This document shows positions 5,085 to 41,199 of a DNA stretch of 64,000 nucleotides, one piece after another. Origin of the DNA: Orbicella franksi (Eukaryota). The notes beneath the pieces are model-generated. The model was not told where the DNA came from. It saw nothing but the letters and a program-made list of their open reading frames with translations, and made no database searches. The stretch covers positions 37,200,001 to 37,264,000 of the forward strand of contig OZ116699.1 in NCBI GenBank assembly GCA_964199315.1, read 5' to 3'. Every line of letters starts with the position of its first letter. Within the stretch, counting starts at the first letter, position 1. The position numbers and the translations under genes are program-made.

Positions 5085-5437
5085 TCAATTTTGACTCAGC
5101 TTGATGGCCTTTTTCAGTTGATGTGGTTTAGGACGTTTTCGTAACCTATTCTTTTTCTTGACACTTTTCCTCCCGATAACTTTTCGTTTTAGGTACAGCT
5201 GAGATCGGTAAATGACGGCATTACAACATTTTGGAGAACACTTTGGAGCACACGAAGATGGACAAGGAGATGGACAGTGATTAGTATAGACTGGCTGTAG
5301 GGGGAGAGTTGGAGAGGAGTAAGCACCGCGATACTGCTGCGACAACGCAATGCAGCAGGATGGAGGGCAAACCGCTGTGCATGATGTTTGGCATTGAGGT
5401 GCACAGACCAAGGATATCTGTGCATGTTCCATACAAC
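5085..5437 (-). CDS. Terminal exon of gene A: two minicollagen/NOWA-type cysteine-rich domains
   Basis: CAPQCQTSCTAVCPPSCC and CPSPCPSSCAPKCSPKCC match CxxxCxxxCxxxCxxxCC exactly, followed by LKRKVIGRKSVKKKNRLRKRPK. Phase-1 acceptor catccatag|GT. Confidence 0.85.
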
Positions 5438-8400
5438 CTATGGATGACAATAAAAATTCATTTTAAATATTATACGCGTTTAATTATGTCCAAAGTCTCT
5501 GTTAAATTCCCAACAGCATTTTTGTTAATGATCAACTTCAGATGAAACGACGCGCTTTCAAAATGTTTTTGCACTCTGCTGTTGTATTTTGTACAGTTTT
5601 CTTTTTATTCTTATTCGGCGCGAAATTAGACAACTTCAAGCAACTTACATGGTATACCAGGCGACTTTGTTGGGTATGTTCTTGAAATCTCGATAGTTGT
5701 TGCACCAGGTGTCTTCCCTGGATTGGAAGAGGTGATGATCGGACGAAAGAAAAAAACATAAAATGAAAAATCACAACCTGTTCAATCAATTATTAAGTTA
5801 CAAATCAAAAATCGTTACGTACGTACCTACGTTAAAATGCCAATCGATGAGTGTTTCAAAAATATGTGTTGAGTAGCACGAGGCAGCCAAGGACAAAACA
5901 AAGGTCATTCTAGTTTTTGAACATTCATATTGTTGGAAGCAGGCCAATCAAATCAGACGTCACTAATGACCCCATCATTGTGCTGGTAGGTAAAGTCTGC
6001 ATGCGAGCCAAGTGGCCCATCAGGCCGGAGCTTATCCCGGTTTCTGTAGCATGAAGCGACTAGGAGTATTTCTACTCCCCCCTGGATGGGATGCTAGTCC
6101 ATCGCAGGGTTACCCTCAGCATTAAGTTCGCCGGTACCCGTTTATACACCTGGGTGGAGAGAGGCACCGTGAGAGTAAAGTGTCTTGCCCAAGAACACAA
6201 CACAATGTCCCCGGCCAGGGCTCGAACCCGGACCGCTCGATCCGGAGACGGGCGCACTAACCATGAGGCCACCGCGCCTCCCACATCATTGTGCTGACAA
6301 AGTATTATTAACTTCGATGAGACCGTAGCTTTGATTAAAGTTTAACGAACCTTTTTGCTCACTTACGTTTCGTTACGGGAATTGTACCCTTGCTGGTAGG
6401 AGACGTGTTTGTGGTTTGCGTAGATATCGTTGGCTGCGTTGGTCTCGTGGAAACAGAACTTGGAGAAGCGTTCCTTATTGTGGTTCCGGGAGTAGCTTTG
6501 GTAACTGACAGAAAATAACGTTTGGCAAAGTTGTAAAGGCATAATAAAAAAATCATTGTGACGATTAATGCTGAATTACTTATTTACTTACTTAGGGGAG
6601 CAGGGATGGAGCAGTGGTGAGAGCGCTCGCCTCCCATCAGTGTGTCCCGGATGAGATTCCCGGACCCGGCGTCATTTGTGGGTTGAGTTTGTTGTTGGTA
6701 TTCTACTGTGCTCCGAGAGGTTTTTCTCGGGGTACTCCGGTTTTCCCCTCTCCACAAAAACCAACATTTTCAAATTCCAATTCGATCCTGGAATGCTCGG
6801 GCATTTCTGAACGAGTTCTTGTGAACTAGTTGGTGCTCCATGGGTAAACAAATTACATATTTACAATTATTTTATCTTATTTTTACGTTTTGTTACTGGG
6901 CCAGTCGCTTTGTTGCTAGGCAGCGAGTTTGAAGTCCTTGTAGTTACTGCAGGGCGCATTGGCCTAGTAGCAACAGAGCTTCGAGATGTGCTTTTTGCAG
7001 TGGATCTTGAAGCCGCTTTAGTAACTAGTAAGATGTACAACGAAGTTCCAATGATAAACAGCCAGGCACGTTTTATTGAAAAAAATAAGCGTCGACCTAA
7101 TTATATTCTTGCTTACCTTTTACCGTTTTGGGGACAGTAGCTTTGCTACTAGGCAACGGTTTTTTGGTCCGTATGGTCACTGCAGGGCGCGTTGGTTTCG
7201 TGGCGACAGAACTGGGAGAGGCGCTCTTTGAAGTGGTACCGGGGGTCCCCTTAGTAGCTAAAAAAAATGACGCACATATCTACAGCTTAGTTCTGAAGAC
7301 TTTAATTGGCTTAGCGTCAACCTAAGCAGTATTTTGTCCACGTCTCGATCTTGTTTGATTACCTTTCGGCTGGACCCCTTGCTGCTAAGCGACGAGTTTG
7401 TGATCTGTATAGTTCATGCGAAAAGCGTTGCTTTTGCAGCAACAGAACTTGCAGAAACCATTATTGCAGTGGTACTGAGAGAAGCTCTCGTGACTTATTT
7501 AGAAACAAGAGCTTTATTATAAATAGCATCCTTAAGTAGGGTTATAAATGAATTAAGCGTCCATTAATTATTTCCTCACTTGCCTTTTGTTACTGGAATT
7601 GTAGCCTTGCTGCTAGGTAACCAACCCGTAGTCTTCTTAGTTTCTACAGGATTTGTTGGTCTCGTAGCCACAGAATTTGGAGAAGTGATTTTTGTCTTAG
7701 TCTTGGGCGTCGTTTTGGTTGCTATATAGTAAAGTAACAATTTATCATTATCATTTGGTGTTAATTAAAAATTAAATGAGGTATTTCAGTTTCTCTTTAC
7801 GCTTTGTTAATGGAATCGTAGCTTTACTGCAAGGCAGCCGGCTTGATGTCCGTTTCGTCTTTGGTTTTGTTGCAACAGACCGCGGTTAAGAGGGGTTCGT
7901 CCCAGCCGTGTGGCGTGTGGTTTTTGTGATTGATAATAAAACGACAAAGAAAACCCAAATACGTCACACGACAGTGACGCAATTATAAAGCAATACGTAT
8001 TCATCTTTCTAATATCTGTTTGAATACAATAATAATTTATAGATCAATTTTATGGTATTTCATATCTATGGGTTATAAAACAATGCCGTAGTTCGGAACT
8101 ATTGTAAGTTAAGTATCTTCCAATCCAATAGATTGGAGAAGCCATTTGGATCACTGATCGGTGTCGGTCGTTTTATAGGATCAACCTATTTTGTTTGCAG
8201 CATAAGAGGATGATTTTCTCTTGTTCATGGCTGGCTCATAGTTCTATATTTTATACTTACCCGTTGGTCTTTGGGTCGGCTTAGTAGCTGGTTTCTTTGT
8301 ACTGGGCAGACCCTTCCCAGGGTTCAAAGTCCTTCTTGTGGATGGTAACCTGGTCGGCCTTGCTGGTCGTTTTGTCCCTAAAGATGCAGGTTTTACTTTT

Positions 8401-11400
8401 GAAGCAAAGTATGTAATACCAAAGAACATTCAAACTTTCACTATTGGAGTTCTGGACCACTTTCTAATAGTTAACTAAGAAAGGTTTTAAACATATTATT
8501 CTAGGTAATATGGAAACGACGTTTGTTAATGTTAGAATTTCACTTACGTTTTGTTGCTGGATTCGTGCCCTTGCTGCTAGGTGACGAACTGGTTGTAGGA
8601 TTTGTTAGTTTTGTTGGCTTTGTAACAACTGGACTTGGTAAAACACTTTTTGTAGAAGCACTGCGAGATGCTGTATGGGAAAAAGAGAACCTAAATTTTG
8701 CTATTCATTCCATATAATTATGCAACCAACGTTTAGATGCGAATATAGGATTTTAATGCCACGATAAAACAAAAAGATTAATCGTTTACATGGCTAGCAA
8801 TTGTATATTTTAAGTTCAAGATCGCAACTTTGCCTGCGATTGACTTGTAAGATACGGGACAAAGAATTAGAACCCATACCTGAAGTATTCGTGTCCCCGT
8901 TTTCACATTGTATTCTCACTACATGTATTTTCCACGAACAACAGTGGGGGTATCAATGGACCTTTTTGACGATGTCAAGCTACATAAACAATTTTTCATT
9001 TTTTTTTTGTCATATATTAGCAAAACAGCCACTTCTTTCCTCTATACATGTAGATCAATTTAATTACATACATATGCTAAGTTTCATAAGAGTCAGGCCC
9101 GTACCTGGTAACAGGCAAACACACTAAATCATCATAGTCACACTAAATACCGCGGAAGAGAATTTACGCATGCAAATTGCCTCAGTCATAATTTCTTCAT
9201 GGACATTGCCTCAGTCATAGTTTGTTCTGGGTACGGCCCTGAGAATCCATTGTAGGCTCATGAAAACATGGGAACAAGCTTGCCAATTTTTACAAAGAAA
9301 TGTTTGCCAGATGGGCAAGCGCGGCTACATTCAACGACACTTACGCCTGGTAGCTTTACTTGTCCCTTTACTTGTTGGTGTTGCTGTTTTGGTCGGATGC
9401 TTGATCTGTGTGGTTTTCGTTTTTGGAGTCGTTGCTTTCGTCGTCAGAGGGGTCGTTTTAATCGGAAGGAAACATGGTTTACTTGATGTATCACTTGCTA
9501 TAAGAACAAGAAAAAAATAGTCCGTTACTCCCAATGAAAATGTTCCCACAGTGCTGATAGACACTAAATAAACAAATAAATCTTGAACGATATAATACAC
9601 ATCTGCAGCCAAGAAAAAACTAACATCAGAATCCTCCGTAGGAAAAAAAACTTGGCGACTGGTATACATTTACCCATAGTTCATAGTGCAAGAAAACACC
9701 GACAATGCCCATTAGTACGAACAGGAAAGTTCTAAAACCTTCAAACCCAGCAAGCACAGTTTTGTTAGTACAGGGAAAAATATGTGCAAACATCACAAAA
9801 CAGTGCAAAACAATATTGTGCCTAATGGGGTGTGTTAGGTTTGCGAGGTATTGTGGTAAAATGTTCAGCCGCCATCTTTTTTCCTCCGATCAACAACAAC
9901 ACACACTTTATCACCAAAGTAGAAAAACTCTTAGTTACAAAAAAATGTAATTGAGACAGAAAATTAGGTATATTCACCCAGAATAATCATCACTTTATCA
10001 TTATTAATCATGATTCTTTGGTTTTAGTCTACGGTGACTTTCCAATATTAGTTCTTCTCCCTTGAGGCACTGATTACCAACATCGTTAGCAGTATACACT
10101 CACGTTCTCCTAACTTGTAAACAAAGATGGAATTTTCAGCTCCAGCGCAGGGTTGGCTTTCACATGTCAGGTCACATGGTTTGTAGTCGGAGGTGAAACA
10201 CTGTCTTGTTGGCCCGTCTCTTTTGTATGTGCTCAGTCCGCCATCTCCAGAGTAACAATCGGCTGGTCAAGAACAAAAAACAAATCATAGATGTCTGAGA
10301 TACTTTTGGGCCTGTTTTACAAAAGGAATAAATATGTAGTATAAAATAATTCCATGTACAAAACTTAATGAACGCGAAATAGTAGTAAAGATGGGGTCTT
10401 TTCCACCGTTTTTTTGCACACTGAGTTGGCGTTTATAAGTAAAAAAAAATCAACCAAGGTACTTGTTATATCATTTAACACTGAATTCTTACCTTGCATA
10501 TCGACATATAGCGCCAAATAAATTTGTTTTTTTATGGAGAGACAGATCGGCTAGATGATTTGTGACAGAATAGTTTCACATGTTGGGGAAAGACTTTTAC
10601 GCAACATTATTGACCGACTTTTTTTAATCGTAAATCATGCGTTTTGGGATGAATAGTAGGAATCATTCTTCAAATCCATTATGCACACTTATTATGCGAT
10701 TATGTTAGTTCAGAGGGCCAATAACTTAAATAAAACAATCAGATTGCTCCATTGTCGGTCCAATATTCCCTAAGTATCGGACCGGACACTGCCTCGAATG
10801 ATCACGCAAGATCACTCTTGAAGATTTTCGGGTAGCAAAGGTCGTGTAATAAATTTCTTATTAACCAAGTTTGCTCGAGACCGTACCAGAAGAATATCGG
10901 TCTTCGGTCTGTTGTTTTTGTTTTTGTTTTTTGTTTTTTACGGATTTCCCTGCATCGGTCCATGCTGTCAACACCTCGGACCGATATTCTCCCACTACGG
11001 CCCTCGCGCTTGGTTAATAAGATATATGTATGGACTTGAACATTTTGATAAGCACATGAAATCATAACTGTTCATAATTGTTCATACCAAATTTCTCTAT
11101 ACCAAAAACTTCATAACCAAATTTCTTGCACTCTAATGCACATCTTTTGATTAAGTAGTCAAGATAACGTCGATCGTAAATCTCCTTGGCGTATTTTATG
11201 CCACTATATTTCGGTGAGGATTCATCACGGTCTGTGAACAACAGATGATGAAGAGGGCGTTGCTCCTGCCAGTTGTCTTTATAGCATCCTAGCCTCCTGT
11301 AGGCTGATGCTGAAAATAAAATAAAACACTTGTGAGACCAAATGTTGTCTTTATTTCTAACTTAATGAGTCCTAGTTGTTTTATCATGCCTGGAGACTAG

Positions 11401-11842
11401 ACCAGTACCTTCTTTTTTCAGTAGATAGAAACGTTATTTGTTTACATTTATTTGTTTTAAAACAAAGGTAATACACGTTATTTTACACCTTAAAACTTGT
11501 TGAAAGTTGTTTGTGTTTATCTCATCTCATATTTTTGTAGTTCTTTTTTTTCTGCTCAAACCCTATTAAAAGATAACAGTTTTAAACAAAAGGGACTTCC
11601 TCTATTGACGTACGCCTCTGTTTAAAGACGGTTACGCGCATTACATAATCTGTCACAGTAAACTAGCAAGCAGCTGCCATCACCACATTTCCATTTGTCT
11701 TTTTATTTTTCTGAAAAATACGTCTCAAAACTATAACCACACATAAATAAATAGCAACTACTGAAACTTAAAATGGTTGAAGGTAATTACCGTCTACGTA
11801 AATCCAAAAAATGACACAAAGAATCCTTGAAAGGCTGCACAT
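5085..11842 (-). CDS. Gene A: secreted protein of about 605 aa; signal peptide + WSC-like Cys domain + Thr/Lys/Pro/Ser mucin-like repeats + two minicollagen-type CRDs + basic tail
   Basis: Exons (minus): 11842-11791 (MCSLSRILCVIFWIYVD), 11309-11088 (ASAYRRLGCYKD..RPL..CALECKKFGYEVFGIEKF), 10262-10104 (ADCYSG..C..C..CAGAENSIFVYKL), 9497-9345, 8670-8548, 8395-8261, 7721-7584, 7257-7117, 7024-6887, 6504-6367, 5717-5649, 5437-5085. All internal exons are open, phase 1-1 and multiples of 3, with AG/GT ends (one GC donor). Confidence 0.8.
5986..6283 (-). mobile_element. Full-length tRNA-derived SINE with CORE-like central domain
   Basis: tRNA-like head (GGTGGCCTCATGG..GGTTCGAGCCC) and CORE-like TTGGGCAAGACACTTTACTCTCACGGTGCCTC. 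13-bp target duplication CATCATTGTGCTG at 5973-5985 and 6284-6296. Degenerate relatives at about 4545-4710 and 39620-39900. Confidence 0.85.
6595..6865 (+). mobile_element. tRNA-derived SINE with V-domain-like core
   Basis: Head GGATGGAGCAGTGGTGAGAGCGCTCGCC..GATTCCCGG, core GGTTTTTCTCGGGGTACTCCGGTTTTCCCCTC, and (ATTTAC)-like tail; lies in a gene A intron. Confidence 0.7.
7363..7493 (-). pseudogene. Decayed mucin-repeat exon of gene A
   Basis: Homologous to neighbouring exons (VTRASLSTTAIMVSASSVAAKA..SSLSSKG) but has an in-frame TGA at 7414-7416 and a length of 131 nt (not a multiple of 3). Confidence 0.7.
7801..7929 (-). pseudogene. Decayed mucin-repeat exon of gene A
   Basis: 129 nt, repeat-homologous (TKTTRHTAGTNPS*PRSVATKPKTKRTSSRLPCSKATIPLTK). 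The acceptor position reads AA instead of AG, and there is an in-frame TAA at 7886-7888. Confidence 0.7.
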
Positions 11843-30100: not shown

Positions 30101-33100
30101 TATCTTTTTAATTAAATTGTGTCTATTTGCGAGTCCGTTTGGAGAAGGACTTTGAAAAGAGCGTCAAGTCTTTTTTTATTTCTAAAGAAATCCTGGCACT
30201 AGCTTTCACTTCTGTAAATTATTGAAATCATCGTCTTGCTCACGCGAACAATTACTATACGCTGTATTTGTTCAACTTACAATGTGACGGGCATTATATA
30301 TATATGCATAAAAAAAGAATGACATTTTCATTAAAACATCGCGATAGAGTAGGGTTGTTTTGTGGACAGCGGCTTTTGACAAGCTAGGAACAGATGTCGA
30401 TGGTCGACGCGTAGATCAGATAGGCCAATTCTTGCATGCCAGTAGCGATAACAGAATCAAACGAAAAACTACACTAGTACGTAACCGAATTTTTCAGCCT
30501 GCCTAAAATTCCCGTGTATTGCAGTCCGAACATTATGAAATCTTGACTAAATTTTCCACAAGACATTAACTCAATCTTGAATCACCACTGCGTGAAAGCC
30601 AAAATATTCTAGAGTATTCTAGACTCGAATATGTGATTGTGACGCAATAGAATCCTAGAGTATTCAAGCCGCACACAACACGTGACGTACACCTGAAATA
30701 TTCGTGTCGAATATGGTGGAATACGCTCCGTTCATAATCGTTCGAGGATTTTCGTTAAAGTATACCACACATCTGTCGTAATCCTAGCGTATGATGGCGA
30801 ATCCTCTGTAAAAAGAACTTTATAAAAGAAGGTAACAGTTCGGGTGCATAGCATTCTCCTGGAAGCAAAATTTAGACTATGAATTCAAAGTATATGCGAT
30901 CTGCGCGTGTATACGTTTATCCTGGAATACGTGATCTTGACGCCAAAGCTATAGAATTCTAGAGTATTCAAGGCGTTTACAACCGTGACGTGGACCTGGA
31001 AAATTCTTATTGAATATGGACATACGCAGGAGCACGACCGTGTATTCGTTCGTTGACCAGAACTATTGTACTTTTTTGGTTCATGTTGTCGGCGCAGCGC
31101 ATGTGTTTTGCTTGAGTCAAGAAATTGACACGCTTTGTTGTAACTTCGAATTCCACTCATTCGGTTTTGACCGACGCTTTCGGGATAATCACTACAAAGC
31201 GATTTCTCTTTGTGTGACCCGTCTCGTCTGAAATGGTTAACACAGCACGAAACCACAAATTGGACACTACGGGATACGTAAAGTTCCGCAAAGTTAAACT
31301 GACTAGAGACACGTAAAGCTGCGCAAAGTTTGGTTAGTAAGAGGAATCAAGTTCGTTTCGGAGAAGTCTTGGTGTATTCAGTGGAGAAAGTCCCGAGACC
31401 TTCAGACAAATATCTTTTCTCTGTGGGATGAGTTTAACTCCGGAGCCCGCAGGACAACGAAACTCCTAAATAACGGCCCAATAGCTTCCTCGGTCGACTC
31501 CCTGCCATCATATCAACATTGCATTACGCTTGAACAAGAAATCACAAAATGTATTACGGAAAACACTTTAATCAGATTTTTTCCTTGAGGTTACTTTTGA
31601 AACGAAATTGACCTTGAATGTGTTTCGAAACGACTTGTAACGAAATGAGAGAAACGACCTACATCAGCATTCTGAGTGTCCGACCTTCAACAAGCACGGA
31701 TCAGCGGTTTTCCACATTAGATACCAGGTTCTCTCGGTTCTCGCGCCATTTTTTTGGCGTCCTTTTTGAAAGGTGTGAAATGTTGAAGCTTGCACCGTTC
31801 TCTTGGTCCTTTTTCACTGTTTAAAAACTCTACTTTGGCGGACAAAATTCAGTTTATCTTCACTTCTTCTCTGTGCACGATTTCAAGCAGTTTTTGGTGG
31901 CATACAGCTGATGAAAACATCGATACATACGGAGGTACGAGTCAACAACAACAGGTAAAACGTAAGCCATTGTTGTCTTCCCGGGTTGTCTTGTACGTAC
32001 GAGTAAGTTAAGCTTAAGTTTTCAGGGTAAAGTTCAGTTGTAATGTTTGCTTAAGATGTATGGAATTGCCTCTGGTTGTAAATGTTTCTTTATCAAGCAG
32101 AAGTTATACATTGGAAGTAAATGTAACCTTGATATCAAGAGGGACAGCAATGGGAATGATGGTGAATTAAACCATTAAATCAAACTACTGTGTAAAATTT
32201 ACTGATTGATTTATTATGATATTTTCCTTAGTACTGCAAGCTTGATTTGAGGTTTCCCAGTGTGGATTTACACATAAACTTAACTAACCTTTTATGCGTA
32301 TTGTATTTTAATCATTGGATGAAGTAAAATTGGTAATGCCTTACATGTATGTATAATCCCTGGCCTCCTTATTTGAAGAAAAAAAGGAAAACCTGTGAGG
32401 AAGAACCCTGGCTTACAAGATACATGTATGTATTAATGACTATTTAGGGGGCCATGGAGACTTTTTGAGATTTATTTTTGTAAGAGCTTTTGAAAAATTA
32501 TATTGGCAGGTAAATTTTGGCATTTCACTAGTCAGTCTCTGTATATTTTATATATAAACAAGGTGATTTGCATATCCGTTTTCAGAGTGCTCAGTAGTAA
32601 ACTAGAGCGTGATTCTAACAGATGACGAACTGAGCAACTGTAGATCTGACTTGACATTTTATTACTATTTAGTTTCGTAGTACACAACTTGTGTGCAGCA
32701 CTCATGAGATAAAATTGCCAAATGCGAATTTACATCATTACACTGATTTGAAATACACATGCGACCGTTGGAAATATGATAGCTACAATAAGTGAACACT
32801 TTTGCAAAAAAAAGCAAAATTGGAAATTATAGATAAACACTGTTACTATTGTGTAACAAAAGAAGCTTTAAAAGTTAAAATTTAGCATTTTTCCGGAAGA
32901 ATTTGTTTGCATGTCTACATGAAGTTATCAGTTCATTCCATTTATTCAGAGAGGCTAACTCAGGTTTACAAAGGTACTTCTCCCAGAGGCATAGGTTACA
33001 TTGATTTGAATTGGGTTATATGGGGCAGCTTGCTTTAAAATCTTTCAAGTGACTTTGAACTTTGATTTATTGTCAAAGTCACTTGGAGGCTGCCCATGTA

Positions 33101-36100
33101 ACCCCGCTTCAAATCGATGTAACCTACCCCTCTGGGAGAAGTACTTTATTATTTGTAAACCTGAGTTAGCCTCTCTGAACAAACAGAATGAACTGATTAG
33201 ATAACTTCATGTAGACATGCAAACAAATTCCTCCTGAAAAATGTTAAATGTTAAATTTTAAATTTTAAATCTTCTCTTGTATTTCAATAATAACAGAGTT
33301 TATTCCTAATTTCCAACTTTCCTTTGTTTTGTAAAAGCATTCACTTATTGTAGCTATCACATTTCCAATGGTCGCTTGTGTATTTCAAATCAGTGTAATG
33401 ATGTAAATTCCCATTTGGCAATTTTATCTGATGAGTACTGCACACAAGTTGTGTAGTACGAAACTAAATAGTAATAAAATGTCAAGTCAAATCTACATTT
33501 GATCAGTTCATCATCTGTTATTTTATATATACATTATATTAAGGTACATGTAAAACCTGTTTCATTGATGACCACTACAAATTTCAAGACAATTTGCTAT
33601 AGTAATGTGAAACTACAGTGAAACTTTGATATAATGAAGTGCCAAAGAATTGGCAAAGTATGTTCACTATAACAGGGTTTTGTATCGAGGTTCTTTTCCG
33701 TATAGTCTACTATTACTGGGGCCATGAAAATCATTCGTTATACCGAGGACCTTGTTATATAGAGGCTCGTTAAATCGAGGTTCCACTGTACTAACCATAT
33801 TCCTTCCAAAGGTAAATATTGAAAATTGAGTTTTATTACTCATTTAGGTTATTAGCCTAAGGAGGAATTTGTTTGCATGTCTACATGAAGTTACCTAATC
33901 AGTTCATTCTGTTTGTTCAGAGTGACTATTAGCCACTCATTTCAGGTTAAGAGCTGAAAACTCTCTCTTCTCTCAAAGGCATCTTAAGTATGTTTTTGCA
34001 TGCACTAGAAACCCAGGTTCTTACAGTGTAGCTTTCCAAATGTGACTGTAAAACTTTTTGGTCATCAATCCTGTCAACACTTAGTGTTGATCTCAGGTCT
34101 TGGTTTGAATTTTCAGCTCTTTGTCTTGAGGTTACCCTATATCTTTCAGAGTGTCTTGCACCCACACCATTTAGCATGGCTATCAATCTACACGTACATG
34201 CATACCAAAAATTTGGAAATAAAATGAATTATCAATTTTTTCAGGGTTTCTCTATGCGAGCATCCAAATCACTTTTTGAAAGCTAAGTCAAAGTGAGTCT
34301 GACTCAAATTTTGGACAGTAGCTAGTTTATCATCCATGTCTGTTAATTTTTATTTTGAAATATTTTTTCTCTTGGAGTGATTTTTGAATGATCACTCCAC
34401 CATTCTTTAATCCTGTTTTGGAAATGTTCTGTAACTTTTTACTGCGATTGAATATGGCAACACACAGGCAATTTTGTTTTTGTGTTTTGTGTCCAGAAAC
34501 TGAGAAACAAATTAAATTAACAAGAAACAAAGTTCACTTTGACTTGTACATGTAGCTTTCAAAATGTGATAATAATAATAATAATGATTTGGACGCCAGC
34601 ACTAAAATGTCTAGAAAAATTTGGCAATTCATTTTATTTGAAAGTCCTTGGTATAGTTTGATAGCCAGCTCTATAAGTTTTAATTTGATATGGGGTTTAC
34701 ATACAATGTCTACAGATTAAATCGGATGCACTACATCTTTTTTGTGTGAGACACCTCTAAAGGTATATGGTAATGTTAAGAGGGTTCCAATTGTTGAACC
34801 GAATAATGATGTTAGAGTGGTTTTCAATTGAGTGTCGTAAAACCAAAACCAAAACCTAAACCAATTACTTACCAATTAGAGTTCTCAGCTAATCTCGAAC
34901 TGTAGTAAAACCAAAACCAAAACCAAAGTAATTGTCTAATTACTTTCGACACTCAACTGAAAACCGCTCTAAATATGCAAAGCAGCAATTCATTAATTCA
35001 TCCCTAATTCTCTTTCGTAACATAGCAGCATCTAGTTCTAAAGCTTGCATACAAAATGTAAGTGTTTTTTTAGACTGCTTCTCAGATGGTTCCGAACTTC
35101 TGCTTTTTCGTAATATAGCAGCATCTAGTTAGAAAGTTGCATGCAAAATGTTAGAAGTGGTTTTTTAGACTTTACTTCTCAAATGCTTCATTATGCCTTT
35201 TCATAACACAGCAGCATCTAGTTATAAAGTTTGCAAAAAAAAAAAAATGTTATAGTGTTTTTTAGAGACTTTGCTTCTCAGATGGTTATGCTTTTTCATA
35301 ACAAAGCAGCATCTAGATATAAAGTAAATGCATACAAAATGTTATAGTATTTTTTTAGGTTTTGCTTCTCAGATGGTTCCTTATACTTTTTCATAACATA
35401 GGGTCTTGGCAATGTAAATTCTTCCATAGTTTGATGAAAATAAACACACACGAACAAGTAACATAAGTTTTATTATTTCAGTATTAATAAAGTATTATTT
35501 GAAATGAAATGAAGATGTCATAACGGCAGTTGTTTACTTTTTGTTGGGATAACATGCATATTGTCCTTGTAATTTTCTCTCTTTTGGGTGGGTTTTGTTA
35601 GGAATCCAAAGGAATTTAAAAGTGTGTTACACTCGGCAGTTTGAACACAGTTTGGGGGATATACAAGCTTTGGTATGGGTCCTCAGTACTTCACGTTGGC
35701 GTCAGTATTCAATCACGAATACGTTTCATACTTTACATGAGTCTCGTGTTCCAGTCGAACACCACAGAACACTTGAAGTGTGTCGTTTATAATACCATAA
35801 AACCTCACGTATACCTCAGTATTCAAACATGAACACGTTTCATACTTCGCATGAGTCTCGTGTCCCAGTCGAACACCACAGAACACTTGAAGTGTGTCGT
35901 TTAGAATACCTTAAAACCTCACGTGTGCCTCAGTATTCAAACATGAACACGTTTCATACTTCGCATGAGTCTCGTGTTCCAGTCGGACGCTTCGGAACAC
36001 TAGCGTGTTGTCTGAATAAACTACGCGGTAGCGTATATTACCTGCATAAAACCCGTTCTTGACGACGCAATACATCTTTGGCTGTGAAAAATGTGACATA

Positions 36101-37394
36101 ACTTTCGTATTCATAGCGTGCGATTCTCGAAAATTAGAGCATACTTGACGTATTCATTAGTATTCGAAGACGTTCACGTCAGAAGTGGCGTCGTGCATCG
36201 CGTGTTCCAGTCGCAAACTCTCGAACAACTGAGAGTATTCGAAAATGTTCGAGTCATAAATGATCGCTATATCTTCGAAGAACATCTAATGCAACATTAA
36301 TCTACCAAAACGTGGCCCGTATGATTTATCGAACACTTCGAGTCATTCACGAGTATTAAATTTGAATACGGAAAAACAGGCCGGATTCCTCCAGAATATT
36401 CCAGGTGTATTTCGAGTCAGCCGTAATCGAATACGTCAGAACATTGCGGCATACGCGGCGTGCGCCGATCCGTATTCGAACGAATTCGGGCCCGAATATT
36501 TGGCTTTTCGCGCAGTGCACTTTTCCCGTTAATTTTTTTTTTCAGCAAAAAGCGGTTTATAACACGTTACAAGTGGTAGCCTACCTTTCGCAATTTTCCA
36601 TGGCCCGTGTTTTGAAGAATTCTCGACAGTTGTATAATCATCCTCTGCAAATATACCGTAACGTACGTGAAACTCAAACCGATGTGATCAGTAAGGGCGG
36701 CATACAATTACCAATATTGCAGTTGAATCAAAGGCATAAGAGCTCCAAATGATCTGAGAACAGCTCATTACAACTATGTAATCGAATGCTTCACAAAATT
36801 TAAACTGTTAGCTACCTTTGTCTCCGCTTATGAAGGAAAATACTTTTTTACCTAACGGTGCACATGTACCTAAATGTTATCTTATCTAAACAACACCGTA
36901 GGTGCTCTTCTTTCGTTATTATTGTTGTTTTACACAGTTCTATTGACTACACAAACTTAGCCTGCTAAACAGGCGGATCGCGAAGCATGATACACGAGCG
37001 CGGAGCGCGATCACGAGCGCGGAGCGGTAGTCGAAAAAAAAATCCAACAAGTGGTTGCGCTCCGCGCTCGTGTATCGCGTTTCGCTCTCTGCCCGGCTAA
37101 TCCGCCTGTTCTGCAGGCTAACACAAACTTAGCCGGGTTGAACTAGATACATGCTCGTACGTACCAGTTCCTGTTATAGGATGATCGTCAGGTTTTTCCT
37201 CGCTCTTGCTTTGACTCGCAGAATCCGAGAGTTCATCTAATACAACCACTTCACCTTTATCTGACAAAATCAAACAGAAACATCACTACCTTTATCACGC
37301 CCTTAGCTGAGCCTATCTGACTTGACCATTTGCATCTGTGGTTTCAAAGTGTAAACTTACTACCTGACTGAAAAACAGGCATGAGATCTACGGG

Positions 37395-37425
<31 letters not shown>

Positions 37426-38236
37426 TATCGAATGTAAAGATCTATGATACTGGATGGAACACAGTTTCGACCAATTCAAGAGGTTACATTACTTGCAAAA
37501 AAGTTTCGGACGATTTTAATTTCGGACAAAAAAGTGTCCGAAAATAAAACCGTCCAAACTTTTTAAGCGTTCGAGATATTTACTGTAGAGTATAAAACTT
37601 GGAAGTAGCTTTAAAGCTCTTGTTTTCCATCATACCGGGCCTCATGGAGCGAATTGTAGTTGAGACACGACTTCACATAAACAGCTTGATAGCATTTGTG
37701 ATATTTTCCCGTCGGTGTATTAGTGAAAGCTCGACTGGCTGCAGTAAAAATATCATTTTCACAGATGCTGTTTCAGCCTAAATCCTGTTTTGTAGGCGTA
37801 AAATTATTTTAGCTATATTTCAGCAGTGTCCGAAATTATTGTCCAAATTTTGTCCGAAATGAGATAAAAAGTGTCCGTAAATTAAACGTCCGAAATTTCT
37901 TGCAAGTTATGTATGACAATTTTTTTTTTTTTTTTTTGTAATTGACTTTGATACAAAGAGCACTAGTATAATACTGTGTATATTTAAGCCTTATCAAACA
38001 CACAGTGGCTTAGAAGTTCAGAACATTGAATATTGCTTGTTACCTTGTCAGAAAGCATTCGCAGCCTACAGTCACTTATAATGATCGTAAGAACTACTTA
38101 CGCCCGTTAGCTGCATTATTTGAGGCCAAAGGATTCAATTCCGAACCTGCAAATTAATAATATTAAAGTAAGGGAGTGTGGAGGGAGTGTCAATAAATAA
38201 CATTTCCAATGTGGTGAACTTCAAGACGAAAAGTCA

Positions 38237-38270
<34 letters not shown>

Positions 38271-38651
38271 GATACCGGTGCGATGCTCTACCAGCTGAGC
38301 TATTGCTTAAATTGGAAAATTAACTGCGATGATCATTCTTCACTTTCATCTACAACCGCAGTTCATATATGAATTATTCCATGTAAACTTCACATCGTGG
38401 TGAAGACTGTGGAGCAAACTAACAAATAAAGAAAGATCGGCGATAAATCTCAAGCAGTTTAAGACCCAAGTACGGAGGCTAGATTTAGGCAGCATCCTAC
38501 ATGGATGTAGTGGCTGCCATCTTTGTAACTCATAATTTTAATTTCTTTTATAGGACTTTTCTGCATATTATTTTTAGATAGTTCTAGTTAGGTGTCCCCT
38601 ATTAGCAATGGAGATTCTCCAGTGCTAGATGTAATTGACACGATAATAAAG

Positions 38652-38695
<44 letters not shown>

Positions 38696-41199
38696 GTTAG
38701 CTCTCTTTGTTCAAGAACGGGATCCTTCATTCACTCGTTCCTCTAAGCTAGTTGATCACATTCTTATGCAACCGTATGATACAACTGACGCATTATGGTT
38801 GGTCAGTTCATATTTATGAACAGACACAATTTCTTATTTTAAGAGCACATTTACCAAGGCAAGTGAAATCTCCCCTCAAGTCGTCAAAATTAATATGTCC
38901 CTTCCTAGATCCATCAACTAAACGTATTTGACCAATTTGGTTTCTAAACTCTGCCACATTCCACAATCTTCTTCGCATACGTTCACGGCAATAGTCAGCG
39001 TAAGCCACGCGTTGTACTTTGCCATTCACAAGTAGTTCAGCTCGAATATTTTCCCCGTCACATCCACCACCAAGCAAAAAGTCCATGTTTGAGCCTTTGA
39101 TACGGAACTCTGGTGACATCAGGGTACCAATAGGGTAATCACCCTCCATGTAGCCAGCTTCGGCGGTGGGACTGGACCTGTTTTCAAATGTTCCTATCCA
39201 CCAATCACCTTGCACGTTAGTTTTGATGTTCGGGTCGCGTTCGTTAACATTGTCTCTGAAGGTTGGTTGGTTATCGAAAGCGTGACCAGTTCTTCTCCAT
39301 TTGGATAGCGTCTTCATGCCATTCTCAAAATCAAAATATTTACAGTTGCCTAAGAATTCAACAAGACAATATCAGATTATGTAAACTGATTCAAGATACT
39401 GCGATGACCTCGCTTCAAGCTCGTTCTGTCCTCTTGTTAAAATTGGCTTTTACCGTCACAACAGGTTAAGGAATTTGACATTTTAAACCTAATTAAAATG
39501 TTTCAGCTTTTCATTCTTATCAGCCCAGGGCATCCCTCACTGGAAAAAAATATGAGCGCTTTATAAATGGGGTCAGGAGGAGTTATCGGTGTAGCTCTCC
39601 AGCGTGCGAGCCTAGTGACTCATCAGGCCGTTTCCTTAGCATAAATATTTCCATCACTAGGAGTTTACTATTGGAGAGTGATAATAAAATATGTATTTCA
39701 CTGTACTCCTAGATGGGATAATAGTCCATCGCAGGTTACTTCTCAACATTATCTCAGGTTGCCTCAGCAACGCGCCGGTACCCATTTATACAGCAGGTCG
39801 TTGAGAGAGGGATTGTAAGAAATGAGTATCTTGCCTCAAGTCGCGTGCGGGCCCTGAACGCATAATCCGGAGTTCCCGCACATGAGGCCAACGGACCCCC
39901 CGTATTCCGTCAAAACCTGAATTTTTTTTCGAGAATTGTTTTCAGTTATAATTTATATGATCATTAGAAATTTTACAGGAACGTAATTAACTTGTCAGGG
40001 TTGGTCTTGAAAATAATTCAACCTCTTCTCGGATTTTGTTGACTGAAAAGCTCAAATAGTCCGCTAACGCGCTCCCTAGGAAATGCTCAAGCGCGAGAAT
40101 TTCCTTGGTTCGACTTACTAGTCTCCAACTTTCAAACTGATCTAATATATTCTCGTTATCAATATGGTCGTTCGTTTAAGTTTTCTATTTCCGACATTTA
40201 AAAATTTCAGTTATCTTACCCACTTTAAAATAACTCTACTTTCTATTGTTTTGGCCAGGATTCATATTTGTGCTTTACCCCGTTTTAAATTATCACGGGC
40301 TTTTCACCATGAAATATAACCCGTTGCAGACCGACATTCAATTGAGCATAATGACACGCTTGGAACATCACTTTGAATCAAAACCAGCCTAAATTAAGAA
40401 TAACATTGAAGTAGATTGTTTGTGGGTGATATCACGAATAAACACCCACCTTGCACGGAAACCAAAAACTCTGCAGACGCCAAAAGGAACGCCAGACAGA
40501 CCGCAGAGGTCCATGGAAATGATCTATATCAAAAAAATGCGAGATATCTATATTAATCAGAGCTTAACTGAAAAAAATTAAGCCTACCCTCGATTAGTAA
40601 TTCCTCTTTTATTTTCCACCGTTTTGATATTCAGTTAAAATAAAAGCGCAATATTAAGATCTAACCGGATAGCTTTTCCTTTTCATGTTAGCAACACTGT
40701 TTACTAGAATATTTATTTCCCGCGCTATGACAGAAAATCAAAACCATCTAAAAGCCACTACTTATTCTAACTTGTATTATCAGGTAGCAATTTAACCATT
40801 ATCCACTTCTATACTACCAAACCAACTGTATATACCTTAAAACAATTCAACTTGTGACTTGTTTTTAAAATAACTTGTTCTTTTTATAGCCGCAAGCCTT
40901 GTTTAAAACCTTATAGTTTAGTCTAGCCCTTGACAAGCCTGTCGGCCCAATTACGGCCCATTTATTTATGACTTTGACAAAACAACCAACCCACCTTAAG
41001 GCCATATCGCTGCGGCGTGATCGCATTGTTAACAACGCATTACATAAAAAAGTCCTTCACATTGAATATTTCACCTGTTTTTTTTAAAAGCGGGGTGTTT
41101 ATCTCGGTTTTAGAGGTGGAGACAAAATTCGTGGTCCAACCGACTAATTGACGCCGATCTTCAGACGATACACGGAAAGCATTTTTACCACCTGTCCAT
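23710..41199 (-). CDS. Gene C: secreted protein of about 527 aa; signal peptide + CBM38/GH32-accessory-like beta domain + K/P/A-rich linker + SEA-like domain + two minicollagen-type CRDs
   Basis: Exons: 41199-41192 (MDR, tentative), 40523-40450 ([25 protein letters not shown]), 39349-38855, 37260-37165, 26472-26260, 25830-25724 ([23 protein letters not shown]), 25189-25131 ([19 protein letters not shown]), 24350-24235, 24125-23710. Phases are compatible throughout. The SEA exons have the same 1-0/0-2/2-1 phases as gene B and an identical 59-nt middle exon. The join across the 10.7-kb intron (37164-26473) is inferred. Confidence 0.7.
25393..25664. mobile_element. 272-bp MITE, TTAA-bounded
   Basis: TTAATCCCCCTATATAGACC .. 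GGTCTATATGGGGGATTAA inverted termini. Confidence 0.75.
26570..29910. repeat. Old intronic tandem duplication of about 0.7 kb, second copy interrupted by about 2 kb of insertions
   Basis: 26570-26815 matches 27280-27540 and 26920-27270 matches 29540-29910 (e.g. ATTGTCATTTA.TTGTTTATTCTTTGAGAAATG, GACTGAGCAAACTTTGCA). Confidence 0.75.
28140..28530. repeat. 80-bp minisatellite, 5 copies
   Basis: ATATTCTGC recurs at 28221, 28301, 28381 and 28461; units are near-identical with no unique spacers. Confidence 0.9.
29913..30069. mobile_element. Palindromic MITE (relative at about 62432-62585)
   Basis: AATAGACCAATTTCGATATATTAAAATTC .. GAATTTTAATATATCAAAATTTGTCTATT inverted termini. Confidence 0.7.
32616..33520. 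repeat. Long imperfect palindrome with arms of about 440 bp
   Basis: Innermost pair CAAGTGACTTTGA (33046-33058) / TCAAAGTCACTTG (33073-33085) with a 14-nt loop; pairing traceable out to TAACAGATG / CATCTGTTA. Confidence 0.9.
33616..33788. mobile_element. Tc1/mariner-type MITE nested in the CACTG element
   Basis: TA|CAGTGAAAC .. GTTCCACTG|TA. Confidence 0.65.
35702..35985. repeat. 114-bp tandem repeat, about 2.5 copies
   Basis: TCAGTATTCAA at 35702, 35816 and 35930. Confidence 0.9.
36958..37120. mobile_element. 163-bp MITE with 9-bp target duplication (Mutator-like TSD length)
   Basis: TAGCCTGC..GCAGGCTA termini flanked by ACACAAACT at 36949-36957 and 37121-37129. Confidence 0.8.
38215..38395 (-). 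mobile_element. tRNA-derived SINE fragment
   Basis: GGGATTCGAACCCGTGACCTCC..CTCTACCAGCTGAGCTA is the reverse complement of tRNA A/B boxes, followed by non-tRNA body sequence. Confidence 0.65.
38855..39349 (-). CDS. Single 495-nt exon encoding a domain resembling the accessory (CBM38-like) module of bacterial GH32 fructanases; part of gene C
   Basis: [31 protein letters not shown]....[36 protein letters not shown]; phase 1-1, with acceptor ttcttag and donor G|GTAAAT. Confidence 0.75.

What the first reader, a model, noticed from the sequence alone, without database searches (positions are those of the whole stretch)
5085..41199. Tandem cluster of three modular secreted genes, each capped by a double minicollagen-type CRD exon but lacking collagen
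Seen: A, B and C are head-to-tail on the minus strand. All end in a phase-1 exon beginning xGT-TGY (C/G-C) that encodes two perfect CxxxCxxxCxxxCxxxCC motifs; no Gly-X-Y repeats occur. Established: this CRD is the disulfide-polymerising module of nematocyst minicollagens and NOWA. Inference: a family that uses the CRD pair as a cross-linking tag to attach glycan-binding or mucin modules to the cnidocyst capsule/tubule or another disulfide-linked matrix such as mucus or skeletal organic matrix.
Basis: partly seen in the sequence, partly recalled or inferred. Interest (0 to 1): 0.8.

Follow-up and report, generated by a model that had tools for sequence, protein, structure and literature searches.

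The report
Coral lectin/mucin genes with minicollagen-type tags
Three neighbouring coral genes encode secreted proteins that join sugar-binding-type or mucin-like modules to a pair of the small cysteine-rich cross-linking units known from stinging-capsule proteins; the design resembles known capsule proteins such as NOWA, but these genes are unnamed and unstudied.

Summary
Six perfect CX3CX3CX3CX3CC motifs lie in three pairs on the minus strand. Each pair sits in a last coding exon that opens AG|GT-TGY in phase 1. No collagen triplet run occurs anywhere in the window.

- **Gene C (618 aa):** signal peptide, CBM/MAM-like jelly roll, linker, SEA-like domain, two CRDs. Spliced transcript contigs and a 97.6% identical transcript-derived protein confirm it.
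- **Gene B (413 aa):** signal peptide, divergent WSC, Lys-rich linker, SEA, two CRDs. Two RNA joints from this species' group support it. So do a full-length Oculina model and a fully spliced Pocillopora transcript.
- **Gene A (606 aa):** signal peptide, WSC, about eight Thr/Pro/Ser-rich exons, two CRDs. It remains a prediction.

The gene order C-B-A is conserved in Stylophora. In the PDB, the CRD profile matches only NOWA and minicollagen CRDs.

These are collagen-free, CRD-tagged matrix proteins built on the logic of NOWA, Cnidoin and CPP-1. Most likely they are disulfide-linked into cnidocysts, but cell type and location were not testable here. All orthologues are named "uncharacterized", and no paper cites them.

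Earlier, unchecked notes of this scan list further collagen-free CRD genes elsewhere in this genome. Verdict: a new variant of a known kind, of moderate interest.

The parts
5085..5437 (-). Gene A last coding exon: junction Cys, CRD1 (5405-5352), 25-residue linker, CRD2 (5276-5223), 45-residue basic tail (17 K/R, no D/E), stop at 5087-5085
   Evidence: Near-identical ORFs occur in public contigs (P0001-P0003).
5649..9497 (-). Gene A mucin-like region. Eight predicted phase 1-1 exons: 9497-9345, 8670-8548, 8395-8261, 7721-7584 (GC donor), 7257-7117, 7024-6887, 6504-6367, 5717-5649. Composition is T 24%, P 14%, S 14%, K 13%. A degenerate copy with an in-frame stop lies at 7930-7802.
   Evidence: The Oculina RefSeq model P0020 joins such exons to the 5717-type exon and the CRD exon. 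No transcript from this species was obtained.
10104..11309 (-). Gene A WSC-like domain in two exons (11309-11088 and 10262-10104), with 8 Cys
   Evidence: Pfam WSC is weak (15.7 bits against a cut-off of 27.8). It is 41% identical to the B domain and conserved in Stylophora and Oculina.
11791..11842 (-). Gene A predicted first exon: start codon and a short hydrophobic signal-like peptide, phase 1 donor
   Evidence: Prediction only.
16454..16833 (-). Gene B last coding exon: CRD1 (16735-16682), linker, CRD2 (16606-16553), basic/His tail, stop at 16456-16454
   Evidence: It is 79% identical in the related coral contig L013.
17555..18687 (-). Gene B SEA domain in three exons (18687-18578, 18154-18096, 17694-17555), with intron phases 1|0|2|1
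   Evidence: Orthologues P0013, P0098 and P0105 pass the Pfam SEA cut-off (34-36 bits against 26.4). The exon junctions reproduce P0169.
19079..19186 (-). Gene B Lys-rich linker exon, phase 1-1
   Evidence: An RNA joint 19822>19186 is seen in run X2. The acceptor, frame and donor are conserved in Stylophora and L013. The exon is present in P0105, P0169 and transcript L017.
19822..20806 (-). Gene B WSC-like domain in two exons (20806-20573 and 19971-19822)
   Evidence: An RNA joint 20573>19971 is seen in X2. The Atlas gives TM 0.92 to a cnidarian cluster in which 82% of members carry PF01822, and all ten best feature hits carry WSC. PDB 7pz2 matches at E 1.1e-3. Pfam itself finds no WSC in P0105.
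21167..21227 (-). Gene B first coding exon (signal-like peptide). In-frame upstream ATGs lie at 21248 and 21269.
   Evidence: It aligns to the N-terminus of Oculina P0169 and is 85% identical in L013.
23544..24125 (-). Gene C last exon: CRD1 (24102-24049), 68-residue Pro/Gln-rich linker, CRD2 (23844-23791), basic tail, stop at 23712-23710, then 3' UTR
24235..25830 (-). Gene C SEA-like domain in three exons (25830-25724, 25189-25131, 24350-24235), with the same phases 1|0|2|1 as in B
   Evidence: hhalign against the B-type SEA gives probability 94.8%, E 5.6e-8. The mouse SEA structure 1ivz is a weak match (E 0.49). Pfam SEA is not detected in P0031.
26260..38146 (-). Gene C linker exons: 38146-38102, 37260-37165, 36644-36585, 27462-27391, 26740-26669 (the last two are 72-nt duplicates) and 26472-26260. 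A 9.1 kb intron separates 36585 from 27462.
   Evidence: Spliced alignment of transcript contigs L003 and L004. The refined model is 603/618 identical to P0031.
38855..39349 (-). Gene C N-terminal beta-sandwich domain, a CBM/MAM-like jelly roll
   Evidence: The AlphaFold model has pLDDT 84.9. Foldseek PDB best hits are CBM61, CBM35, CBM4, cleaved-adhesin and MAM domains. Sequence relatives occur in cnidarian and bacterial proteins, including GH32 enzymes. No Pfam family matches.
40450..41155 (-). Gene C exons 1 and 2: 5' UTR from about 41155, ATG at 41026, exon 1 ending at 40995, exon 2 at 40523-40450 (signal peptide)

Best explanation
This is a conserved tandem cluster of three paralogous genes in a stony coral close to Orbicella. 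Each gene encodes a secreted, collagen-free modular protein.

**Common design.** Each protein ends in the same 3' cassette: CRD, a Pro-rich linker, CRD, then a basic tail. The heads differ:
- C: CBM/MAM-like jelly roll plus an SEA-like domain.
- B: divergent WSC plus a Lys-rich linker plus SEA.
- A: divergent WSC plus a mucin-like Thr/Pro/Ser array.

**How the genes arose.** Domain borders sit on phase-1 introns. The SEA of B and C shares the same internal intron phases. The genes therefore arose by duplication and exon shuffling around a shared SEA-CRD or CRD cassette.

**Proposed mechanism (inferred, not shown).**
- The proteins enter the secretory pathway.
- The two CRDs exchange disulfides with CRDs of minicollagens, NOWA and related proteins.
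- This ties the lectin-like or glycosylated head covalently into the cnidocyst wall or tubule matrix. There the head can bind or present glycans, for example the glycosaminoglycan scaffold of the tubule.
- None of the six CRDs has the Val/Ile-4 plus Pro-14 signature that switches to the multivalent C-CRD fold. On that rule, two monovalent N-type CRDs would make each molecule a bivalent link or decoration, not a network node.

**Shown:** gene structures of C and B, domain identities, synteny, and CRD identity. **Inferred:** cross-linking, cnidocyst location, glycan binding, and the full gene A transcript.
For: **CRDs**
- Six CRDs lie in three phase-1 last coding exons.
- The CRD profile hits only NOWA and minicollagen CRDs in the PDB.

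**Gene C**
- Transcript contigs L003 and L004 align as 13 GT-AG exons.
- The model is 603/618 identical to the transcript-derived protein P0031.
- Full-length orthologues sit on 2-3 kb transcript contigs in Pocillopora, Acropora and Montipora.

**Gene B**
- RNA joints WSC1>WSC2 and WSC2>linker fall exactly at the predicted sites.
- The model is 67% identical end to end to Oculina LOC144644454.
- The Pocillopora transcript contig L017 carries WSC, linker, SEA and CRD2 in one molecule.
- All eight exons are intact and 79-94% identical in the related contig L013, which is about 72-76% identical in DNA overall.

**Domains**
- SEA.
- WSC-like.
- Jelly roll.

**Relationships**
- The A and B WSC domains are 41% identical. 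The B and C SEA domains are 28% identical with the same intron phases.
- The order C-B-A is the same on Stylophora scaffold LSMT01000053.

**Literature**
- CRDs integrate NOWA, Cnidoin and CPP-1 into the capsule by disulfide exchange, and Cnidoin has two C-terminal CRDs (PMC6910907).
- The position 4/14 rule and CRD valency come from PMC4863159.
- Lectin-type and WSC domains occur in capsule proteomes (PMC5566210).
Against: - There is no expression or localisation evidence for any cell type.
- The accession numbers of the orthologues appear in no searchable paper. They are also absent from the held supplements of the Stylophora cell atlas.
- No minicollagen-type propeptide is evident after the signal peptides (read from the sequences, not tested).
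- The RNA libraries that hold A and B also hold their introns, so they show little beyond two joints. A polyA run of the same species label gave no reads on B.
- RefSeq splits the B-type gene in Stylophora and Pocillopora, and the A-type gene in Oculina, into two models each.
- WSC and the SEA of C do not reach Pfam thresholds.
- The full architecture was found only in stony corals. It is not part of the pan-cnidarian capsule toolkit.
Confidence: 0.55

Rival explanations
1. The proteins have the same architecture but work outside the cnidocyst. They would be secreted to the surface or into mucus, where the CRD pairs polymerise them into a disulfide-linked glycocalyx, mucus gel or larval/settlement coat. 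The CRD would then be used as a general extracellular cross-linker.
For: - SEA domains and Thr/Pro/Ser-rich arrays are typical of mucins (established knowledge). Gene A is 52% T+P+S over 345 residues.
- No minicollagen-like propeptide was seen.
- Gene C orthologues are abundant in ordinary adult coral transcriptome assemblies.
- An Acropora SEA-domain, coral-specific secreted gene is expressed in scattered oral ectoderm cells of unknown type (PMC2629781). Its identity with this family is untested.
Against: - In the papers read here, this CRD is described only in nematocyst proteins (PMC4863159, PMC6910907, PMC12549020).
- The only structural matches of the CRD profile are NOWA and minicollagen.
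- Scattered oral ectodermal cells are also the pattern of cnidoblast genes in the same paper.
Confidence: 0.25
2. The proteins belong to the skeletal organic matrix. Calicoblasts would secrete them, and they would be cross-linked into the matrix that templates aragonite.
For: - The full architecture was recovered only from stony corals.
- Acidic or mucin-like and lectin-like proteins are known in coral skeleton proteomes (established knowledge).
Against: - The proteins are basic rather than acidic: the tails are K/R-rich and the A repeat region is 13% Lys.
- The 90% identity cluster that holds the Acropora millepora orthologue carries only 'uncharacterized' names and no skeletal-matrix protein name.
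- Nothing links the CRD to skeleton.
Confidence: 0.07
3. Gene A, and possibly the 5' part of B, is not one functional gene. The WSC exons and the mucin-CRD exons would be separate or decaying units, and the 606-aa product would be an artefact of chaining symmetric phase-1 exons.
For: - All A introns are phase 1, so any subset of exons stays in frame.
- One repeat copy has a stop, and one has a GC donor.
- No A-type gene is called at the orthologous place in Stylophora.
- RefSeq splits the Oculina A locus into 96-aa and 232-aa models. Its second WSC exon is interrupted by about 350 bp.
- The Pocillopora B-type transcript contig carries a frameshift and a premature stop.
Against: - Every chosen A exon is open, with good splice signals.
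- The A WSC exons are 70-83% identical at protein level in Stylophora and Oculina.
- The A CRD exon is 89-97% identical in three related coral contigs.
- B is intact here and in Oculina.
Confidence: 0.15

Closest known systems
NOWA (nematocyst outer wall antigen, Hydra)
   Same: It is a secreted, collagen-free protein with lectin-type module(s) at the N-terminal side and minicollagen-type CRDs at the C-terminus. It is incorporated into the capsule wall polymer through disulfides. NOWA CRDs are the best PDB matches to the CRDs here.
   Different: NOWA has an SCP domain, a C-type lectin domain and eight CRDs (my recollection of Engel et al. 2002; cited in PMC6134521). The genes here have WSC, SEA or a CBM-like jelly roll and only two CRDs separated by a linker. 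No sequence homology outside the CRDs was found.
Cnidoin and CPP-1 (Hydra capsule wall proteins)
   Same: Both are non-collagen cores carrying terminal CRDs that cross-link spontaneously. Cnidoin has two C-terminal CRDs (PMC6910907).
   Different: Their cores are a silk-like elastomer or polyproline, and CRDs flank both ends. Here both CRDs are C-terminal and the cores are folded lectin-like domains or a mucin-like array.
Minicollagens
   Same: They share the same CX3CX3CX3CX3CC unit, Pro-rich sequence next to the CRDs, and a basic C-terminal end.
   Different: There is no Gly-X-Y helix here at all and no N-terminal CRD. Folded domains stand in place of the collagen rod.
SEA-domain mucins (e.g. 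MUC1/MUC16 type)
   Same: An SEA module sits next to Ser/Thr/Pro-rich sequence in an extracellular protein. B-type orthologues pass the Pfam SEA cut-off.
   Different: There is no transmembrane segment and no G/SVVV autocleavage motif (read from the B and C sequences). The C-terminus is a CRD pair instead of a membrane anchor.
Uncharacterized RefSeq proteins of stony corals
   Same: They are direct orthologues with the same architectures. Examples are Stylophora LOC111323849 and LOC111323842, Pocillopora LOC113678264 and LOC113678254, Oculina LOC144644454 and LOC144638991, Acropora LOC114961759, and Orbicella LOC110045005.
   Different: None has a name, a described function or a literature mention. 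Several are truncated or split models. Acroporid C-type proteins carry 3-4 CRDs instead of 2.

Membership tests
Minicollagen | Terminal CRDs with the pattern CX3CX3CX3CX3CC | tested here: met
   There are six perfect copies. A profile of them hits minicollagen 1zpx and NOWA 2hm3-6 and nothing else in the PDB.
Minicollagen | Central collagen helix of about 12-16 Gly-X-Y repeats (PMC4863159) | tested here: not met
   The longest Gly-X-Y run in A, B and C is 2. No run of 5 or more exists in any frame of the window.
Minicollagen | CRDs at both the N- and the C-terminus, with an N-terminal propeptide | tested here: not met
   Both CRDs are C-terminal. The N-termini continue from the signal-like peptide straight into WSC or jelly-roll domains.
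CRD-tagged non-collagen cnidocyst proteins (NOWA / Cnidoin / CPP-1 kind) | Secreted non-collagen core plus one or more minicollagen-type CRDs | tested here: met
   The models of A, B and C have hydrophobic N-termini and C-terminal CRD pairs. The signal peptide is judged from the sequence only.
CRD-tagged non-collagen cnidocyst proteins (NOWA / Cnidoin / CPP-1 kind) | Expression in cnidoblasts and disulfide-dependent incorporation into the capsule | not testable with these tools
   No cell-type or proteome data could be reached.
NOWA proper | SCP domain, C-type lectin domain and an eightfold CRD repeat | tested here: not met
   Pfam finds no SCP or C-type lectin domain in P0031, P0105, P0013 or the window exons. 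Only two CRDs are present.
SEA domain (PF01390) | Match to the Pfam model above its gathering score | tested here: met
   B-type proteins P0013, P0098, P0105, P0104 and P0110 score 34-39 bits against a cut-off of 26.4. The C-type protein shows no Pfam hit, but hhalign against the B SEA gives 94.8% probability, and the intron phases are identical.
SEA domain (PF01390) | G/SVVV autoproteolysis motif of cleaving SEA domains | tested here: not met
   The motif is not present in the B or C sequences (read from the models). Many SEA domains lack it, so this does not exclude membership.
WSC domain (PF01822) | Match to the Pfam model above its gathering score | tested here: not met
   The first WSC exon of A alone scores 15.7 bits against 27.8. 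The full B-type domain in P0105 gives no hit at E 0.1.
WSC domain (PF01822) | WSC fold and eight-cysteine framework | tested here: inconclusive
   There are eight Cys in A and in B. The Atlas gives TM 0.92 to a cnidarian cluster with PF01822 in 82% of members, and 0.56-0.60 to fungal, chordate and arthropod WSC proteins. PDB 7pz2 matches at E 1.1e-3 over 78 residues. I recall 7pz2 as the yeast Wsc1 domain; this is from memory. The domain is best called a divergent WSC.
Carbohydrate-binding jelly roll (CBM / MAM-like) | Beta-sandwich fold similar to solved CBMs | tested here: met
   The model has pLDDT 84.9. Foldseek gives E 1e-4 to 1e-3 with TM up to 0.64 to CBM61, CBM35, CBM4, CBM16, cleaved-adhesin and MAM domains.
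Carbohydrate-binding jelly roll (CBM / MAM-like) | Demonstrated sugar binding or a conserved ligand site | not tested
   No ligand-site comparison was made. Identity to the solved CBMs is only 9-15%.
Mucin-like protein | Tandem Pro/Thr/Ser-rich repeats | tested here: met
   The region is 345 residues long with T 24%, P 14% and S 14%, in about eight units of about 45 residues, each unit one exon.
Mucin-like protein | Dense O-glycosylation | not testable with these tools
   This needs biochemistry.

The most novel reading that the evidence does not exclude
The minicollagen CRD may have escaped the stinging capsule in stony corals. On this reading, the cluster encodes a coral-specific, disulfide-polymerised extracellular coat: surface glycocalyx, mucus gel, larval settlement glue, or the adhesive threads of spirocysts. 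The CRD pair would serve as a general polymerisation tag for lectin and mucin modules. The CRD would then no longer be a marker for nematocyst wall proteins.
Probability: 0.2. Interest if true: 0.7.

Novelty: new variant of a known kind. Interest (0 to 1): 0.45.

Why it matters
CRDs are the covalent "snap fasteners" of the cnidocyst, one of the toughest protein structures known. They are also being used as cross-linker modules in biomaterials.

The cluster shows that stony corals attach lectin-like (WSC, CBM-like), SEA and mucin-like modules to a CRD pair. This widens the list of cargo that can be wired into such polymers. It also gives a clean example of exon shuffling on phase-1 introns.

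It supplies named, testable candidates for cnidocyst-glycan interactions in corals: Stylophora XP_022783025 and XP_022783015, Pocillopora LOC113678264 and LOC113678254, and Oculina LOC144644454. All are currently annotated as "uncharacterized".

If the proteins turn out to act outside cnidocysts, that would change how CRD-bearing genes are read in cnidarian genomes.

Tried and rejected
1. **Pfam on single exons.** This gave almost nothing because the domains are split over exons. It was solved by finding full-length orthologues.
2. **Hand-built splicing of B's SEA exons.** The first attempt gave phase conflicts. The orthologues P0013 and P0169 showed the correct acceptors.
3. **First greedy refinement of gene C.** It failed and was redone with prefix scoring.
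4. **Read laying on B.** The metatranscriptome contigs cover introns as well as exons. Only two joints were informative, and the raw-read run gave no reads on B. Nothing was learned about the SEA-to-CRD junctions in this species.
5. **Metagenome scan with the CRD alignment.** It returned only unspliced genomic coral contigs. These were useful for conservation but not for splicing.
6. **Word-indexed protein searches with P0013 and P0105.** Each found only two proteins.
7. **Reading B as two genes, as in RefSeq for Stylophora and Pocillopora.** I rejected this for three reasons:
   - The linker exon's donor and frame are conserved, while the read-through tail is not.
   - The Pocillopora meandrina and Oculina models and transcript L017 join all parts.
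   - An SEA-CRD protein without a signal peptide makes no sense.
8. **The 406-bp gap between contig L001 and the window (4156-4561).** I tested it as a 3' UTR intron. It has no GT-AG ends, so it is an indel.
9. **Literature and supplement searches.** Searches for the accession numbers and for SEA or WSC together with minicollagen found nothing specific.
10. **Sequence search of the jelly-roll domain against the PDB.** It gave only chance hits. The fold search was needed.


Full report
**Observation**

A six-frame scan finds exactly six matches to C-x3-C-x3-C-x3-C-x3-CC in the window. All are on the minus strand, in three pairs:
- A: 5405-5352 and 5276-5223.
- B: 16735-16682 and 16606-16553.
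- C: 24102-24049 and 23844-23791.

Each pair lies in one open exon that follows a pyrimidine tract and an AG, and begins GT-TGT or GT-TGC. The exon starts are 5437, 16833 and 24125. The stops are at 5087-5085, 16456-16454 and 23712-23710. In the spliced models the preceding intron is phase 1 in all three genes. The junction codon is Cys in A and Gly in B and C. No run of five or more Gly-X-Y triplets exists in any frame of the window.

**Is the motif the minicollagen CRD?**

A profile of the six 24-residue segments was searched against all PDB chain sequences. It hits four sequences and nothing else: three NOWA CRD constructs (2hm3, 2hm4/5, 2hm6; E 0.0016-0.02) and the minicollagen CRD 1zpx (E 0.033). 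For an 18-residue motif this is as specific as can be expected.

Tursch et al. (PMC4863159) report that Val/Ile at position 4 plus Pro at position 14 switch the N-CRD fold to the multivalent C-CRD fold, with a conserved Pro at position 11. None of the six CRDs here has that pair. CRD2 of all three genes, and CRD1 of C, have Pro11 without Pro14. By that rule they look N-type, that is monovalent. This is an inference from sequence, not a test.

**Gene C**

A profile of the three terminal exons was scored against 1.84 billion representative proteins and gave 29 hits. One hit, P0015 (567 aa), is a full-length protein on a 2.6 kb Logan contig. It clusters with Pocillopora LOC113678264 and LOC131789989.

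A search with P0015 found these orthologues:
- Stylophora LOC111323849, Acropora and Montipora orthologues.
- Two 616-618 aa proteins from 2.1-2.4 kb contigs, P0031 and P0032.
- Orbicella faveolata LOC110045005, which sits in the 90% identity cluster of P0031.

The transcript contigs that encode P0032 (L003, L004) align to the window as 13 blocks from 41155 to 23544 at 83-96% identity. A GT-AG model refined against P0031 gives 618 aa with one stop, 603/618 identical to P0031. The CRD exon of C is therefore spliced to the upstream modules. The window probably comes from a coral very close to Orbicella.

**Domains of C**

- *N-terminal domain (exon 39349-38855).* It has no Pfam match. It has clear sequence relatives in cnidarian multi-repeat proteins and in bacterial proteins, including GH32 enzymes.
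- *Its fold.* An AlphaFold model from a 34-sequence alignment has pLDDT 84.9. It is a beta-sandwich whose best solved matches are carbohydrate-binding modules (CBM61, CBM35, CBM4, CBM16), cleaved-adhesin domains and MAM domains, with TM up to 0.64. The Atlas places it near GH32-associated and DUF4980-type jelly rolls.
- *Domain before the CRDs.* It is not called SEA by Pfam. It aligns to the B-type SEA by profile-profile comparison (probability 94.8%, E 5.6e-8). It is encoded by three exons with the same phases (1|0|2|1) as the SEA of B.

**Gene B**

Orthologue P0013 (Stylophora LOC111323842) and P0098 (Pocillopora LOC113678254) contain SEA plus two CRDs and pass the Pfam SEA cut-off. Longer models carry WSC-like, Lys-rich linker, SEA and CRD2 in one chain:
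- P0105 (Pocillopora meandrina, 424 aa).
- P0104.
- P0169 (Oculina LOC144644454, 426 aa).

The window model has 8 exons and 413 aa with a single stop. It is 67% identical to P0169 from signal peptide to tail.

Reads and contigs of four RNA runs were laid on 15900-21600. They gave two joints, in run X2, that coincide with the predicted introns: 20573>19971 and 19822>19186. The ends are CT..AC on the plus strand, which is GT..AG on the minus strand. The same libraries also cover introns, so they say nothing about the other junctions. A polyA raw-read run gave no reads on B.

The linker exon (19186-19079) was not foreseen. Its acceptor region, frame and GTAAGT/GTACGT donor are conserved in Stylophora and in contig L013. 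The read-through tail is not conserved.

A Pocillopora transcript contig (L017, 1301 nt) contains WSC, linker, SEA, CRD2 and 3' UTR in one spliced molecule. It carries one frameshift and one premature stop.

In L013, a related coral contig about 72-76% identical in DNA, all eight B exons are intact and 79-94% identical in protein.

**The WSC question**

Pfam does not reach its cut-off: 15.7 bits against 27.8 for the first A exon, and no hit in P0105. The case for a divergent WSC rests on:
- Eight cysteines in the domain.
- All ten best family-bearing Atlas feature hits being WSC.
- TM 0.92 to a cnidarian cluster in which 82% of members carry PF01822.
- TM 0.56-0.60 to WSC proteins of fungi, chordates and arthropods.
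- The only PDB sequence hit being 7pz2, at E 1.1e-3. I recall 7pz2 as the yeast Wsc1 sensor domain; this is from memory.

I call it a divergent WSC.

**Gene A**

Chaining the best phase-1 exons gives 12 exons and 606 aa:
- A short signal-like exon.
- Two WSC exons, 41% identical to those of B.
- Eight Thr/Pro/Ser/Lys-rich exons of about 45 residues.
- The CRD exon.

One repeat copy (7930-7802) has a stop. One chosen exon has a GC donor.

Support is indirect:
- The Oculina model P0020 joins repeat exons to the 5717-type exon and the CRD exon, with the same Cys-Cys junction.
- The WSC and CRD exons are conserved in Stylophora and Oculina.
- The CRD exon is 89-97% identical in three related contigs.

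Against this:
- Every intron is phase 1, so an open frame proves little.
- RefSeq splits the Oculina locus in two, and its second WSC exon is interrupted.
- No A-type gene is called at the orthologous place in the Stylophora annotation.
- RNA libraries hold 29-43% of the A region, but the same libraries hold introns of B.

A remains a prediction.

**Cluster and evolution**

On Stylophora scaffold LSMT01000053 the order is C, then WSC-linker-SEA-CRD (B), then WSC ... CRD (A). A fourth, inverted gene with WSC, SEA and CRD follows. In Pocillopora the B and C orthologues share one 221 kb contig.

B shares its head with A and its SEA-CRD end with C. This is what another first-stage note (s1-198484) called a chimera. 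The simplest reading is an ancestral WSC-SEA-CRD gene whose copies exchanged heads or middles on phase-1 introns. Acroporid C-type proteins have three or four CRDs, so the number of CRDs is itself variable.

**Function**

What is established concerns the CRD, not these proteins:
- CRDs integrate minicollagens, NOWA, Cnidoin and CPP-1 into the capsule polymer by disulfide exchange.
- They work as transferable cross-linkers on unrelated proteins.
- Cnidoin carries two C-terminal CRDs (PMC4863159, PMC6910907).

Lectin-type domains, including WSC, are found in capsule proteomes (PMC5566210). In Nematostella, about a third of matrisome genes (176 of 551) are expressed in the cnidocyte lineage (PMC12549020).

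On this basis the most likely role is a NOWA-like one. A lectin-like or glycosylated head would be tied covalently into the cnidocyst wall or tubule. I give this 0.55.

I could not test cell type:
- The orthologues' accession numbers occur in no searchable paper.
- They do not occur in the held supplements of the Stylophora atlas or of a cnidocyte preprint.
- No paper links SEA or WSC with minicollagen-type CRDs.

One lead is untested. In Acropora millepora a coral-specific secreted SEA-domain unigene (C014-E10) is co-expressed with two other unknown secreted genes. Expression is in scattered oral ectodermal cells of planulae and polyps (PMC2629781). This pattern resembles that of the cnidoblast genes in the same paper.

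**Rivals**

- *Extracellular coat or mucus (0.25).* It fits the mucin-like features and the lack of a visible propeptide.
- *Skeletal matrix (0.07).* The basic composition and the absence of any skeletal-protein name in the Acropora millepora cluster count against it.
- *Gene A is not a single functional gene (0.15).* This possibility is not exclusive of the others.

**Novelty**

The principle of CRDs as cross-linking tags on non-collagen proteins is known. The architectures (WSC, SEA or jelly roll, or a mucin array, followed by a C-terminal CRD pair), their tandem cluster and its conservation across stony corals are not described in anything I could search. All database entries are "uncharacterized", and one fragment is mislabelled keratin-associated protein-like.

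Other first-stage notes of this scan report further collagen-free CRD genes elsewhere in this genome (s1-198443, s1-214227). They are unchecked, but they suggest a larger repertoire. I class the finding as a new variant of a known kind, with interest 0.45.

Noticed in passing
window 18257-18551: A long GTCA/GTCAGT-type microsatellite lies in the intron between the first and second SEA exons of gene B. It creates spurious 'SVSQ' open frames on the minus strand. Read laying skipped it as a repeat.
   Followed up: no
window 27462-27391 and 26740-26669: Two adjacent 72-nt exons of gene C are duplicates of each other. Their products differ at a few residues. Both are present in the transcript-derived protein P0031.
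   Followed up: partly
window 7930-7802 and 7584: Gene A holds a degenerate mucin-repeat copy with an in-frame stop. The next repeat exon ends in a GC instead of a GT donor (AG|GCAAGT).
   Followed up: partly
window 4156-4561: A 406-bp stretch downstream of gene A is absent from a 98.8% identical public contig (L001). There are no GT-AG ends, so it is an insertion/deletion polymorphism and not a 3' UTR intron.
   Followed up: yes
L005 17858-22159 (Stylophora scaffold LSMT01000053): A fourth, inverted paralogue with WSC, SEA (weak Pfam) and CRD lies next to the A orthologue in Stylophora. The window ends before the corresponding place.
   Followed up: partly
L017 (Pocillopora transcript contig, ERR9592155): The only fully spliced B-type transcript contig found has a one-base frameshift in the second WSC exon. 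It also has a TGA in place of the Trp codon before the first CRD. This may be an assembly error or a defective allele.
   Followed up: no
L018 7232-7749 (Oculina patagonica CM126648.1): In Oculina the second WSC exon of the A orthologue is interrupted by about 350 bp. RefSeq splits the locus into 96-aa and 232-aa models. The locus neighbours a TPR/CHAT gene, not B or C.
   Followed up: partly
P0034, P0035, P0011 (Acropora, Montipora): Acroporid orthologues of gene C carry three or four CRDs instead of two. A Montipora fragment of the same protein is named 'keratin-associated protein 12-1-like' by automatic annotation.
   Followed up: no
P0009, P0017, P0012, P0019, P0027: The CRD profile also recovered unnamed proteins with 5-9 CRDs. 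Two of them have an N-terminal Cys-rich domain that looks like a SUEL/rhamnose-binding lectin. Pfam found nothing in them.
   Followed up: no
P0033, P0036, P0038, P0039 and others: The jelly-roll domain of gene C belongs to an unnamed domain family. It is repeated up to four times in Stylophora proteins, one of them with ShK domains. It is also found at about 45-50% identity in bacterial proteins and inside actinobacterial GH32 enzymes.
   Followed up: partly
window 43030-61514: ApoL-like and E2-like open frames lie upstream of gene C (long plus-strand ORFs at 50132-51265 and 56533-57603, E2-like ORFs at 53713-54165 and 60849-61511). They are the subject of other first-stage notes and were not examined here.
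   Followed up: no
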